A DNA stretch of 64,000 nucleotides from Octopus bimaculoides (Eukaryota): contig NC_068995.1 in NCBI RefSeq assembly GCF_001194135.2, positions 23,351,821-23,415,820 of the forward strand, read 5' to 3'. The notes under the pieces were generated by a model. That model had not been told where the DNA came from, did no database searches, and saw only the letters and a list, made by a program, of their open reading frames with translations. The stretch's first letter is position 1. Every line of letters starts with the position of its first letter. The translations under genes and the position numbers were made by a program. Shown one piece after another: positions 35,787 to 37,924 of this stretch.

Positions 35787-35956
35787 GTGATGGTTTGTTG
35801 CCAACTTAATGTGGCATTCCCAGTAAAAGGAAGAATGCTACTGCTATTTAGCCCCAGGAAACATCATTTCGAGTTGGCTATGATGAGACACAAGCGTTCT
35901 GTGTCCCTAAGTTTTGAAACAGCAGAAATAAGCACTTCTACCAAGCAAAGCCAGCA

Positions 35957-35999
35957 TTCAGAGACTAGTTTCAGAGTCATTGCTCTTCATCAATCAGGA
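35957..35999 (-). ncRNA. Minimal type-I hammerhead ribozyme, probably inactivated copy
   Basis: Minus strand tcctga TTGATGA agag-caatga-ctct GAAA c-ta-gTC tctgaa: C3->U core change and a mismatched stem I. Confidence 0.65.
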
Positions 36000-36334
36000 G
36001 TAGCTTGGCTTGCTTGCTGTAGATTCGTATTCGCCTTTGAAAACATAGAATTTCAAATGAAATAAATTCACTGATCTACAAAATTAGAAATATTGCATTT
36101 CTAAATCTCTCAGAGAGACATATACAATAGCAGCACAATAAATTGATGATTTCTTGCCGACGTAGTGTGACAGTTCCAGGAAAGGGAAGAATGCTACTGC
36201 TACTGCTATTTATTTCCAGTTGGCTATGTGACACAAGTGTTCTGTGTCATTTGTAGATCAGGGAATTTATTTCATTTGAAATTCTATGAGTCTTCAAAGG
36301 CGAATAAGCATCGACAGCGAGCAAGCCAAGCTAC

Positions 36335-36377
36335 TTCAGACTGATGAAGAGCAGTGACTCTGAAACTAGTCTCTGCG
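36335..36377 (+). ncRNA. Minimal type-I hammerhead ribozyme, intact core
   Basis: caga CTGATGA(36341-47) agag-cagtga-ctct GAAA(36362-65) c-ta-GTC(36369-71) tctg. Stem I caga/tctg, stem II agag/ctct, palindromic ACTAGT stem III; predicted cleavage after C36371. Confidence 0.8.
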
Positions 36378-37924
36378 TGTTGCTTTGCTGGGCGGAGGTG
36401 GTTATCTCCCCTGTTTGAAATCTTAAGGACACAGAACGCTTGTATCACATACCCAACTGGAAACGAAATTTCCTAGGGCTGAATTACCAGTAGCATTCTT
36501 CCCTTTCCTGAGACTGCCACATTAAGTTGGAAACAAACTATCATGTTATCGTGTTGGTATGGTATCAGACACTCTGAGAGATATAGAAATGCAATATTTC
36601 TAATTATATATATATTAATAATAATAATAATAATATGACAACAAAAGAATGAATGAGATCTCGATATTATGCAAAATAGAGTAATTTATCTATAAATACA
36701 ATATGTGACAATTAGTTGCTTGTCTTAATAAAACTTCGAACGCCGGCATCTCATCAGTTAGTAGGACAAACCTTGTATGTCTCCACTGTGCTGTTTTTGT
36801 GGGAGCAACTACGTTCGAAGACGCATTGTCATTCAATGCTCAAAATTAGGAGTAGATGGACAGCCGACAACAGTTGAGAAGTCATTTTTATATTACTTGT
36901 CATCTTTTCCATTTGTTTCTCTCGTTTGCGTATTCAACTCAATTGTTTTCGCATTTCATGTTGTGTACAATTTGTGACGTCATGTACCCATATATGCATA
37001 TGAATATATATANNNNNNNNNNNNNNNNNNNNNNNNNNNNNNNNNNNNNNNNNNNNNNNNNNNNNNNNNNNNNNNNNNNNNNNNNNNNNNNNNNNNNNNN
37101 NNNNNNNNNNNNNNNNNNNNNNNNNNNNNNNNNNNNNNNNNNNNNNNNNNNNNNNNNNNNNNNNNNNNNNNNNNNNNNNNNNNNNNNNNNNNNNNNNNNN
37201 NNNNNNNNNNNNNNNNNNNNNNNNNNNNNNNNNNNNNNNNNNNNNNNNNNNNNNNNNNNNNNNNNNNNNNNNNNNNNNNNNNNNNNNNNNNNNNNNNNNN
37301 NNNNNNNNNNNNNNNNNNNNNNNNNNNNNNNNNNNNNNNNNNNNNNNNNNNNNNNNNNNNNNNNNNNNNNNNNNNNNNNNNNNNNNNNNNNNNNNNNNNN
37401 NNNNNNNNNNNNNNNNNNNNNNNNNNNNNNNNNNNNNNNNNNNNNNNNNNNNNNNNNNNNNNNNNNNNNNNNNNNNNNNNNNNNNNNNNNNNNNNNNNNN
37501 NNNNNNNNNNNNNNNNNNNNNNNNNNNNNNNNNNNNNNNNNNNNNNNNNNNNNNNNNNNNNNNNNNNNNNNNNNNNNNNNNNNNNNNNNNNNNNNNNNNN
37601 NNNNNNNNNNNNNNNNNNNNNNNNNNNNNNNNNNNNNNNNNNNNNNNNNNNNNNNNNNNNNNNNNNNNNNNNNNNNNNNNNNNNNNNNNNNNNNNNNNNN
37701 NNNNNNNNNNNNNNNNNNNNNNNNNNNNNNNNNNNNNNNNNNNNNNNNNNNNNNNNNNNNNNNNNNNNNNNNNNNNNNNNNNNNNNNNNNNNNNNNNNNN
37801 NNNNNNNNNNNNNNNNNNNNNNNNNNNNNNNNNNNNNNNNNNNNNNNNNNNNNNNNNNNNNNNNNNNNNNNNNNNNNNNNNNNNNNNNNNNNNATATATA
37901 TATATATATATACATACATATGTA

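What the first reader, a model, noticed from the sequence alone, without database searches (positions are those of the whole stretch)
35788..36604. Candidate cephalopod retrozyme: a ~355-nt non-coding hammerhead-bearing monomer in tandem-plus-inverted array
Seen: a monomer (36249-36604, +) faces a head-to-tail partial tandem of the same unit on the minus strand (36248->35788). The monomer's start and end coincide with the tandem junction (tttcta|atttgtagatc), and each complete unit carries one hammerhead. No coding capacity is evident. Established: metazoan non-LTR retrozymes are small tandem repeats with type-I hammerheads that yield monomeric and circular RNAs, and Penelope-like insertions characteristically carry direct plus inverted pseudo-LTR copies containing hammerheads. 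Inference: this is a non-autonomous, PLE-mobilised retrozyme family that may produce ~350-nt circular RNAs. I do not know whether this family has been described.
Basis: partly seen in the sequence, partly recalled or inferred. Interest (0 to 1): 0.85.

Follow-up and report, generated by a model that had tools for sequence, protein, structure and literature searches.

The report
Decayed hammerhead retroelement relic in octopus DNA
This is a real but old, mutated three-piece insertion of a ~355-bp non-coding repeat carrying a hammerhead ribozyme, arranged as Penelope-like retroelements typically insert; it is an ordinary member of a known class, and this locus cannot make the proposed RNA circle.

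Summary
The described anatomy is correct. A full 355-nt unit lies on the + strand (36250-36604). It faces 1.33 head-to-tail units on the - strand (36251-35788), and (TA)n microsatellites bound the whole block.

The + unit carries a sequence-intact type-I hammerhead (core 36341-36371, cut after 36371). It was the only hit of a strict descriptor (0.015 expected by chance). It was also the top hit of a covariance model built only from four validated retrozyme hammerheads (E about 1e-3). Rfam's own models miss it.

The claim "one hammerhead per unit" holds only partly:
- The - strand copy has the core mutation C3 to U and a helix I mismatch.
- The third piece lacks the hammerhead region.
- No strand carries two hammerheads, so this locus cannot excise a unit-length RNA or circle.

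The copies differ by 15-23% and encode nothing. No further copy was found in the rest of the window or in 123 kb of octopus-type loci, so family size is untested.

The host is octopus-like. It carries Penelope-like elements with a different, minimal hammerhead; one remnant lies 2.6 kb upstream.

Verdict: a relic of a retrozyme-like, Penelope-dependent element. It is a new member of a known kind, of modest interest.

The parts
35743..35787 (.). Left flanking (TA)n microsatellite, then GAAG. This is the outer boundary of the - strand arm.
   Evidence: TRF reports 35743-35783, period 2, 20.5 copies. The chance that both array ends abut TA tracts is about 8e-5.
35788..36082 (-). Copy C: unit positions 1-295. 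It is truncated at its 3' end against the microsatellite and carries the degenerate hammerhead.
   Evidence: BLAST 84% and MAFFT 86% identity to A; K2P 0.15.
35957..35999 (-). Degenerate hammerhead of copy C. The core reads UUGAUGA (C3->U at 35993), helix I has a U-U mismatch, and the would-be cut follows 35963.
   Evidence: Covariance model hit of 16.8 bits, E 0.014. Sequence comparison. C3/G8 changes abolish cleavage (PMC11167929).
36083..36251 (-). Copy B: 5'-truncated unit, positions 177-355, joined head-to-tail to copy C. It has no hammerhead region.
   Evidence: BLAST 77% and MAFFT 81% identity to A; K2P 0.22. The junction is read.
36250..36604 (+). Copy A: one complete 355-nt unit, 41% GC, non-coding.
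   Evidence: Its termini equal the tandem junction seen between B and C.
36250..36288 (+). 5'-terminal block of the unit, 97% conserved between A and C (counterpart at 36082-36044 on the - strand).
   Evidence: Inverted repeat I11, 39 nt at 97%. Identity profile.
36337..36375 (+). Sequence-intact type-I hammerhead. Helix I is CAGA/UCUG. The core is CUGAUGA (36341-36347). Helix II is AGAG/CUCU with loop CAGUGA. GAAA follows. Helix III is A-U and C-G around UA, forming the palindrome ACUAGU at 36365-36370. The cut is predicted after C36371.
   Evidence: Only descriptor hit in the window, 0.015 expected. Covariance model hit of 20.2 bits, E 1.3e-3. The architecture matches published retrozyme hammerheads.
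36584..36602 (+). Perfect 7-bp hairpin at the unit's 3' terminus (UAGAAAU-GCAAU-AUUUCUA). It is identical in copy B (36103-36085, - strand). It is a possible recognition site for the reverse transcriptase (inference).
36605..36637 (.). Right flanking (TA)5 followed by (TAA)n, directly after the 3' end of copy A.

Best explanation
The 817-bp block is an old, now inert, composite insertion of a short (355-nt), non-coding, hammerhead-bearing retroelement in an octopus-like genome. The element belongs to the class that depends on Penelope-like elements (PLEs): a non-LTR retrozyme, or equivalently a derivative of a PLE pseudo-LTR (pLTR).

Proposed mechanism (inferred): a PLE endonuclease nicked a (TA)n microsatellite, and a PLE reverse transcriptase copied element RNA from both nicked strands. 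That would produce two arms whose 3' ends abut the split microsatellite and whose 5' ends meet head-to-head with 2-3 nt of microhomology. This is the known PLE signature of a partial tandem plus an inverted 5'-truncated copy.

One arm runs across the unit's end-to-start junction (units 177-355 then 1-295), so its template was multimeric or circular. The other arm is exactly one unit.

In a live tandem array the hammerhead would pair with its neighbour through its palindromic helix III (ACUAGU). It would cut after GUC and release 355-nt monomers that a host ligase could circularise. Here that cannot happen:
- each strand has only one ribozyme site;
- the - strand site has C3->U;
- the copies have diverged 15-23%.

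Shown: the anatomy, the motif, the flanks, the presence of PLEs and the absence of coding capacity. Inferred: the insertion mechanism, dependence on a PLE, and any past circle formation.
For: - Three-piece anatomy with exact unit closure.
- The hammerhead is significant by two independent tests (1 hit against 0.015 expected; the top two hits of a model trained on validated retrozyme ribozymes).
- Its build (4-bp helix II with a 6-nt loop, 2-bp palindromic helix III) matches the 'canonical metazoan type I' description (PMC4209133). It also matches the mussel, coral and axolotl retrozyme ribozymes.
- Unit size of 355 nt and 41% GC fall within the published retrozyme range.
- Both ends abut (TA)n tracts, p about 8e-5. 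This fits the PLE target bias.
- The divergent inverted-plus-tandem layout is the published PLE layout.
- PLEs with RT followed by endonuclease exist in this genome and its relatives, and they carry a different, minimal hammerhead. This mirrors the published split between retrozyme and PLE ribozymes.
- The pairwise distances (0.15, 0.22, 0.23) do not differ significantly, which is compatible with one insertion event.
- Similar hammerhead units occur in related loci at (TA)n sites or as divergent inverted pairs (L007 and L002).
Against: - No second copy of the unit was found in the other 58 kb of the window or in 123 kb of octopus-type loci, so mobility and family size are unproven.
- Rfam hammerhead models do not score the motif.
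- Helix I has only 4 contiguous pairs, and the 10.1-11.1 pair is A-U rather than the usual G-C.
- The minimum-energy fold of the region buries CUGAUGA in an alternative hairpin.
- With only two copies of the ribozyme there is no covariation test.
- The unit shows no sequence similarity to the PLE loci recovered, so no autonomous partner is identified.
- The - strand arm ends at unit position 295, not 355. This needs an extra assumption: internal initiation of reverse transcription, or later loss into the microsatellite.
Confidence: 0.62

Rival explanations
1. The 355-nt unit is simply the pseudo-LTR (terminal repeat) of an autonomous Penelope-like element family. This locus would hold pLTR-only debris: a solo pLTR plus a 5'-truncated tandem. 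It would not be a separate non-autonomous retrozyme family.
For: - The PLE-type layout and (TA)n target fit this equally well.
- Opposite-strand hammerhead pairs 100-700 bp apart were attributed to truncated PLEs in Schistosoma.
- Vertebrate retrozymes are sister to PLE pLTRs (bioRxiv 10.64898/2026.07.22.740005).
- O. vulgaris has about 30 Penelope families, and only one was sampled here.
Against: - The B-C junction and copy A close the unit at 355 nt with no room for an ORF.
- The one PLE family recovered carries a different, minimal hammerhead and shares no sequence with the unit.
- The unit's ribozyme is of the canonical retrozyme type.
Confidence: 0.22
2. It is a SINE-like, pol III-driven hammerhead element, like the Schistosoma Sm-alpha repeats. 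It would be mobilised by a LINE, with the (TAA)n run as its tail.
For: - Copy A ends in a (TA)n(TAA)n run.
- LINE fragments are present in the window.
- A hammerhead next to a tRNA-like sequence exists in related locus L007.
Against: - ARAGORN finds no tRNA in the window.
- There is no convincing A or B box in the unit.
- Rfam finds no tRNA, 5S or 7SL match.
- The tandem-plus-inverted composite with microsatellite on both sides is not a SINE signature.
Confidence: 0.06
3. It is a local inverted or tandem duplication of non-mobile DNA, and the hammerhead-like motif is fortuitous.
For: No other copy was found in about 181 kb examined. Rfam is silent.
Against: - The motif passes two significance tests.
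- Copy A is exactly one unit long.
- Both boundaries fall at (TA)n tracts.
- The layout matches a known retroelement signature.
Confidence: 0.05

Closest known systems
Metazoan non-LTR retrozymes (Cervera & de la Pena 2020, PMC7229834), e.g. the 350-390-bp repeats of the mussel Mytilus galloprovincialis
   Same: - A short (355 nt), AT-rich (41% GC), non-coding unit.
- A type-I hammerhead with a 4-bp helix II and a short palindromic helix III, which implies action as a dimer.
- Head-to-tail joining of units.
- Coexistence with PLEs that carry minimal hammerheads.
   Different: - There are only 1.33 tandem units on one strand and a single unit on the other.
- No two same-strand ribozymes are present, and one ribozyme is mutated at C3.
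- No sequence similarity to the mussel, coral or axolotl units beyond the ribozyme core.
- Copy number and expression are unknown.
- Helix I is only 4 bp, and the 10.1-11.1 pair is A-U.
Penelope-like element insertions with pseudo-LTRs (Craig et al. 2021, PMC8557442; Cervera & de la Pena 2014, PMC4209133)
   Same: - A partial tandem plus an inverted 5'-truncated copy arranged head-to-head.
- A hammerhead inside the repeat.
- Insertion at a (TA)n microsatellite.
- Two alternative 3' ends, reminiscent of the PLE 'tail'.
   Different: - There is no RT/GIY-YIG ORF between the repeats.
- The ribozyme is canonical-like, not the minimal type found downstream of the endonuclease in the octopus PLE family sampled here.
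- The two 3' ends are 60 nt apart rather than 30-40.
Opposite-strand hammerhead pairs in Schistosoma mansoni (PMC4209133)
   Same: Two hammerheads about 370 bp apart on opposite strands, interpreted there as truncated PLE insertions.
   Different: Those are minimal hammerheads. This one has a helix III and a short helix II.
Newt satellite 2 and Schistosoma Sm-alpha hammerhead repeats
   Same: A hammerhead with an unstable palindromic helix III inside a repeat of about 330-350 bp.
   Different: Those form long arrays, or have a tRNA-like pol III head. Neither feature is seen here.

Membership tests
Hammerhead ribozyme, type I | Conserved core CUGANGA ... GAAA ... UH, with the cleavage nucleotide not G | tested here: met
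   Copy A has CUGAUGA 36341-36347, GAAA 36362-36365 and GUC 36369-36371. The - strand copy fails this test (UUGAUGA).
Hammerhead ribozyme, type I | Three helices around the core, with helix I open-ended | tested here: met
   The descriptor gives helix I 4 bp, helix II 4 bp and helix III 2 bp. It made one hit in the window against 0.015 expected.
Hammerhead ribozyme, type I | Scores with curated covariance models (Rfam Hammerhead families) at gathering threshold | tested here: not met
   No hammerhead family was reported at gathering score or at E<=10, even for a 101-nt slice.
Hammerhead ribozyme, type I | Resembles experimentally validated retrozyme hammerheads in both sequence and structure | tested here: met
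   Model R1 was built only from the mussel, coral and two axolotl ribozymes. Copy A scores 20.2 bits (E 1.3e-3) and ranks first in 64 kb. E-values from this model are rough.
Hammerhead ribozyme, type I | Compensatory base changes that support the helices | tested here: inconclusive
   Only two copies exist. Helix II and helix III are identical in both, and helix I differs by a disruptive change.
Hammerhead ribozyme, type I | Self-cleavage at the predicted site | not testable with these tools
   This needs in vitro transcription of a monomer and a tandem dimer.
Metazoan non-LTR retrozyme | Head-to-tail tandem of at least 2 units, so that two same-strand hammerheads flank a unit | tested here: not met
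   The - strand has 1.33 units with one (mutated) ribozyme. The + strand has one unit with one ribozyme. TRF reports no 355-nt array.
Metazoan non-LTR retrozyme | Unit of about 150-450 bp, GC below 45%, non-coding, with no LTR, PBS or PPT | tested here: met
   The unit is 355 nt with 41% GC. The longest ORF is 92 aa, and the antisense ORFs of units A and C find no homologues. Pfam was not run on ORFs of the unit.
Metazoan non-LTR retrozyme | Multi-copy family dispersed in the genome | tested here: inconclusive
   No copies were found in the rest of the window, in 123 kb of octopus-type loci, or in the metagenome, GTDB and viral collections. The source genome itself could not be searched.
Metazoan non-LTR retrozyme | Coexistence with autonomous PLEs in the same genome | tested here: met
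   A PLE endonuclease remnant lies at 32818-33158, and a PLE 3' fragment with a minimal hammerhead lies at 46654-46548. Homologues are named Octopus vulgaris and O. sinensis. The RT-then-endonuclease order is seen in L006.
Metazoan non-LTR retrozyme | Highly self-paired monomer RNA | tested here: inconclusive
   The unit's fold z-score is -0.1. The validated mussel retrozyme also gives z = 0.05, against coral -3.5 and axolotl -1.7. The test therefore does not discriminate.
Metazoan non-LTR retrozyme | Expressed as monomeric linear and circular RNA | not testable with these tools
   No transcriptome data were available.
Penelope-like element insertion (pLTR architecture) | Partial tandem plus an inverted 5'-truncated copy, head-to-head | tested here: met
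   published description.
Penelope-like element insertion (pLTR architecture) | An RT plus GIY-YIG ORF between the repeats | tested here: not met
   The unit closes at 355 nt. There is no ORF within the array, and the flanks within the array bounds are microsatellite.
Penelope-like element insertion (pLTR architecture) | AT-rich or (TA)n target | tested here: met
   Both ends abut (TA)n tracts, p about 8e-5.
Penelope-like element insertion (pLTR architecture) | Sequence identity with the terminal region of an autonomous PLE of the same genome | tested here: not met
   No similarity to the PLE loci L002-L007. Only one PLE family was sampled.
SINE-like hammerhead element (Sm-alpha type) | tRNA-like head with pol III A and B boxes | tested here: not met
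   ARAGORN finds none. Box searches give only matches with 1-2 mismatches.

The most novel reading that the evidence does not exclude
The unit may be a relic of a so far undescribed cephalopod retrozyme family. Intact tandem arrays elsewhere in octopus genomes would be transcribed, self-cleaved through a dimeric hammerhead (ACUAGU helix III) and ligated into abundant ~355-nt circular RNAs, mobilised by octopus Penelope elements.

Independently of that, a read-through transcript of this inverted locus would fold into a ~295-bp double-stranded hairpin (-430 kcal/mol, z = -28.8). In an animal with very active A-to-I editing, such a hairpin would be a substrate for ADAR or small-RNA pathways.
Probability: 0.3. 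Interest if true: 0.5.

Novelty: new member of a known kind. Interest (0 to 1): 0.3.

Why it matters
If intact arrays of this unit exist, octopuses would join mussels, corals and salamanders as animals that make ribozyme-derived circular RNAs. They would offer a second mollusc lineage in which to study how Penelope-like elements mobilise such parasites.

The locus also shows, within one genome, the published split between canonical retrozyme hammerheads and minimal Penelope hammerheads. Its exact-unit ends do not coincide with the ribozyme cut site, which bears on which RNA form serves as the template for reverse transcription.

By itself, this single decayed locus adds little beyond an annotation.

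Tried and rejected
- **Rfam.** Searches at gathering threshold and at E<=10 (64 kb, 2 kb and 101 nt) gave no hammerhead. I therefore built my own descriptor and model.
- **Protein route to other copies.** I searched the 5.8-billion-protein database with the unit's antisense ORFs, hoping for spurious ORF calls on other copies. Nothing was found.
- **DNA pattern scans.** Two ribozyme patterns against the metagenome contigs, and the looser one also against the GTDB-genome and viral contigs, gave zero hits. None of these collections holds the host genome.
- **LINE ORF for species identification.** This gave only one unrelated metagenome hit.
- **Pfam.** The ten largest ORFs of complex sequence gave nothing. 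A six-frame reference was rejected by the tool. My own stop-to-stop scan then revealed the PLE endonuclease remnant.
- **Folding z-score as a retrozyme test.** I rejected it as uninformative, because a validated mussel retrozyme also scores z about 0.
- **Confirming the GIY-YIG fold of the endonuclease remnant.** Pfam and PDB profile searches were negative. The AlphaFold model had pLDDT 44, so no fold search was run. The PLE assignment rests on four things: the CxC..H..H and Y[K/I]GET motifs, the RT immediately upstream in L006 (RVT_1 30.6 bits), the adjacent conserved minimal hammerhead, and recognition of the endonuclease motif from my own knowledge.
- **Homology between the window unit and the L007 hammerhead unit.** None was found (z = 0.6).
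- **Orthology of L002 and L003 with the window.** Rejected, because only interspersed repeats match.
- **Other hammerhead-like sites.** The site at 51764-51805 scores 10.7 bits (E about 1) with a poor helix II, and I treated it as chance.
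Full report
**1. What is in the sequence**

Reading the region, BLAST of the proposed monomer against the window and MAFFT alignments confirm three pieces of one ~355-nt unit.
- Copy A lies on the + strand at 36250-36604 and spans unit positions 1-355.
- Copy B lies on the - strand at 36251-36083 and spans unit positions 177-355.
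- Copy C follows B directly on the - strand at 36082-35788 and spans unit positions 1-295.

The B|C junction reads ..GCAATATTTCTAAT|TTTGTAGATCAG... This is exactly A's last bases followed by A's first bases, so A is one complete unit to within 0-2 nt. A and B meet head-to-head and share 2-3 nt (36249-36251).

Identities are 86% for A-C, 81% for A-B and 80% for B-C. The K2P distances are 0.15, 0.22 and 0.23. In the 110-nt three-way overlap these differences are within sampling error.

No other copy exists in the 64-kb window. TRF does not call an array.

The block is bounded by (TA)22 on the left (35743-35787) and by (TA)5(TAA)n on the right (36605-36637). With 44 TA tracts in 58 kb, two random boundaries would both fall within 5 nt of a tract edge with probability about 8e-5.

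**2. The hammerhead**

Copy A contains CAGA-CUGAUGA-AGAG-CAGUGA-CUCU-GAAA-C-UA-G-UC|UCUG at 36337-36375. This gives a 4-bp helix I and a 4-bp helix II with a 6-nt loop. Helix III has two pairs around UA, and its bases form the palindrome ACUAGU.

Two tests show it is not a chance match.
- A strict type-I descriptor written for this purpose finds only this site on both strands of the window. It finds 0.015 sites per Markov-simulated 58 kb.
- I built a covariance model solely from the four experimentally validated retrozyme ribozymes printed in the supplement of PMC7229834: mussel Mg353, coral Amil224 and axolotl Ax353 and Ax330. It ranks A's site first (20.2 bits, E 1.3e-3) and the homologous - strand site second (16.8 bits, E 0.014) in an unfiltered scan of the window.

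The build matches the published definition of canonical metazoan type-I hammerheads. These have a 4-bp helix II and a helix III of 1-2 bp capped by a 2-4-nt palindromic loop, and they are active as dimers (PMC4209133). The validated ribozymes also have palindromic helix III sequences: ACGCGCGU, ACAGUACUGU, ACACGUGU and ACAUGU.

Caveats:
- Rfam reports no hammerhead at any threshold tried.
- The 10.1-11.1 pair is A-U instead of the usual G-C.
- Helix I has only four contiguous pairs.
- The local minimum-energy fold sequesters the CUGAUGA box in a competing hairpin.

The - strand copy C reads UUGAUGA (C3->U at 35993) and has a U-U mismatch in helix I. C3 pairs with G8, and changes at either position abolish cleavage (PMC11167929). 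Copy B lacks the ribozyme region altogether.

The locus therefore holds two ribozyme sites, one per strand, and only one has an intact core.

**3. Coding capacity and other RNA features**

The longest ORF in the block is 92 aa and lies antisense to C. A database search with the two antisense ORFs returned nothing.

The unit has no tRNA and no convincing pol III boxes.

As a linear or circular RNA, the unit folds no better than shuffled sequence (z = -0.1). The validated mussel retrozyme behaves the same way (z = 0.05), while coral gives -3.5 and axolotl -1.7. This criterion therefore does not discriminate.

Two terminal features are conserved between copies.
- The first 39 nt are 97% identical between A and C.
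- A perfect 7-bp hairpin sits at the 3' end and is identical in A and B (36584-36602 and 36103-36085).

Transcribed as a whole, the 817-nt block would form a ~295-bp hairpin (-430 kcal/mol, z = -28.8). In that hairpin each ribozyme would be paired with its antisense.

**4. Host and Penelope-like elements**

A stop-to-stop six-frame scan exposed a frameshifted remnant at 32818-33158 (+). It carries the motif ..IPCSCGRLYKGKT..KDH..ADH... Its homologues include proteins named from Octopus vulgaris and Octopus sinensis.

At the DNA level the remnant and its 3' flank are 82-89% identical to loci on O. vulgaris OX597819.1 (L002) and O. sinensis CM016859.1 (L003). Several other interspersed repeats of the window match those loci at up to 92%. 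The window therefore comes from an octopus or a close relative, and the 'cephalopod' attribution is supported.

The family alignment keeps a CxC..H..H pattern and Y[K/I]GET. [quoted passage not shown]

In locus L006 the same strand carries, just upstream, reverse-transcriptase fragments. Joined together they pass the Pfam RVT_1 cut-off (30.6 bits).

Pfam, a PDB profile search and an AlphaFold model (pLDDT 44) could not confirm the GIY-YIG fold directly. That assignment therefore partly rests on motif recognition.

Downstream of the endonuclease, these loci carry a conserved minimal hammerhead: CUGAUGA-A-GGCUGG..UCAGCC-GAAAC-GUU-GUGUU. It has a 5-bp helix I, a 6-7-bp helix II with an unpaired 5' A, and no helix III. 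Locus L004 shows compensatory changes in helix II. This is the PLE 'min-HHR' described in PMC4209133.

In the window, the PLE copy runs into the N gap at 33361 exactly where that ribozyme is expected. A second, 5'-truncated fragment of the same PLE 3' region, starting at its ribozyme, lies at 46654-46548 (-).

The genome therefore contains PLEs, but the family sampled carries a different ribozyme type from the 355-nt unit. It also shares no sequence with the unit. This is the same split reported for retrozymes versus PLEs in coral and mussel.

**5. How it most likely arose and works**

Three observations fit the published PLE insertion signature and the AT-rich target preference with possible internal initiation of reverse transcription shown for a purified PLE enzyme:
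- the divergent (head-to-head) arrangement of a full copy and a 5'-truncated partial tandem;
- (TA)n on both outer sides;
- a 2-3-nt overlap at the inversion point.

I infer one, or possibly two, target-primed events at a (TA)n tract, with cDNA synthesis from both nicked strands.

The - strand arm crosses the 355|1 junction, so its template was a multimer or a circle. The + strand arm is exactly one unit.

The unit's ends (1/355) do not coincide with the ribozyme cut site (122|123). The templates were therefore not hammerhead-cleaved linear monomers. The ends may instead reflect a preferred initiation site near the conserved 3' hairpin. This step is inference.

Rates can be implied from the O. 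vulgaris repeat study, in which a Jukes-Cantor distance of 0.09 corresponds to about 25 My and 0.2 to about 56 My. On that basis, pairwise distances of 0.15-0.23 suggest an age of roughly 20-30 My if all three pieces were identical at insertion. This is also inference.

Circle formation requires a unit flanked by two same-strand ribozymes. This locus has none, so it is not a source of ~350-nt circles, whatever the family does elsewhere.

**6. Related structures found on the way**
- L007 comes from ENA assembly ERZ21867824, whose organism is not stated. It holds a ~404-nt unit in 1.1 tandem copies abutting (TA)n. The unit has a strong canonical hammerhead (32.4 bits, E 5e-7) just downstream of a tRNA-like sequence. 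It is not homologous to the window unit.
- L002 (O. vulgaris) holds a ~610-bp palindrome of two ~300-nt arms. Each arm has a hammerhead-like motif with an ACAGCUGU helix III, and the arms are again divergent.

Short hammerhead units in PLE-style arrangements thus seem recurrent in these genomes. I found no paper describing hammerheads or retrozymes in cephalopods in the library searched.

**7. Verdict**

It overreaches on 'one hammerhead per unit', on circle production from this locus, and on the existence of a family, which could not be tested because no tool gave access to the source genome.

The finding is a new member of a known kind and a decayed one. Interest is modest (0.3). It would rise to about 0.5 if intact, expressed arrays exist elsewhere in the genome.

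Noticed in passing
window 32818-33360 (+): Frameshifted remnant of a Penelope-like element endonuclease (32818-33158; CxC..H..H and YKGKT motifs). It is followed by a tRNA-like sequence (33199-33265), (AAT)n and a conserved block (33315-33360). The block runs into the N gap exactly where related octopus loci carry a minimal hammerhead. Its homologues are named from Octopus vulgaris and O. sinensis.
   Followed up: yes
window 46548-46654 (-): 5'-truncated 3' fragment of the same Penelope-like family, beginning at its minimal hammerhead (CUGAUGA-A-GGCUGG..UCAGCC-GAAAC-GUU). Here helix I is lost. Intact versions lie at L002 11928 (-) and at L004 10945 (-) and 11140 (+), with compensatory changes in helix II.
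   Followed up: partly
L007 3614-4060 (-): A ~404-nt unit present as 1.1 tandem copies, abutting a (TA)n tract. It has a strong canonical type-I hammerhead (32.4 bits, E 5e-7) immediately downstream of a tRNA-like sequence, so it looks like a SINE-like or retrozyme-like element. It is not homologous to the window unit.
   Followed up: partly
L002 6648-7260 (Octopus vulgaris OX597819.1): A ~610-bp near-perfect palindrome made of two divergent ~300-nt arms. Each arm carries a hammerhead-like motif with a palindromic ACAGCUGU helix III; one arm has CUGAUGG in the core. This is the same inverted-pair theme as the finding.
   Followed up: partly
L006 8746-10480 (+): The most complete Penelope-like ORF remnant recovered. 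It runs from an N-terminal region through RT fragments (RVT_1 30.6 bits when joined) to the endonuclease, all on one strand.
   Followed up: partly
window 27533-27754 (-): Remnant of a mariner-type transposase (Pfam Transposase_1, E 2.5e-17).
   Followed up: partly
window 31705-32106 (-), 13840-14226 (+), 29187-29672 (+): ORF fragments that look like LINE reverse transcriptase. Pfam gives no hit. The first has a single 57%-identical hit in a marine metagenome contig.
   Followed up: partly
window 38738-39093: A ~350-bp interspersed repeat with several copies in the O. vulgaris and O. sinensis loci (up to 88% identity). It is probably an abundant octopus SINE.
   Followed up: no
window 51764-51805 (+): A hammerhead-like string with a perfect 5-bp helix I (CGAUA/UAUCG) but a poor helix II and a C at position 16.1. 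It scores 10.7 bits with E about 1, and is probably chance.
   Followed up: partly
window 35788-36604: Transcribed as one RNA, the whole array would fold into a ~295-bp imperfect hairpin (-430 kcal/mol, z = -28.8). This is a potential double-stranded RNA substrate for editing or small-RNA pathways.
   Followed up: partly
window, 18 N runs (e.g. 33361-33649, 37013-37893): Assembly gaps often sit next to microsatellites and to Penelope-like sequence. This is consistent with the known difficulty of assembling such insertions. The gap at 37013 starts only 408 bp downstream of the array.
   Followed up: no
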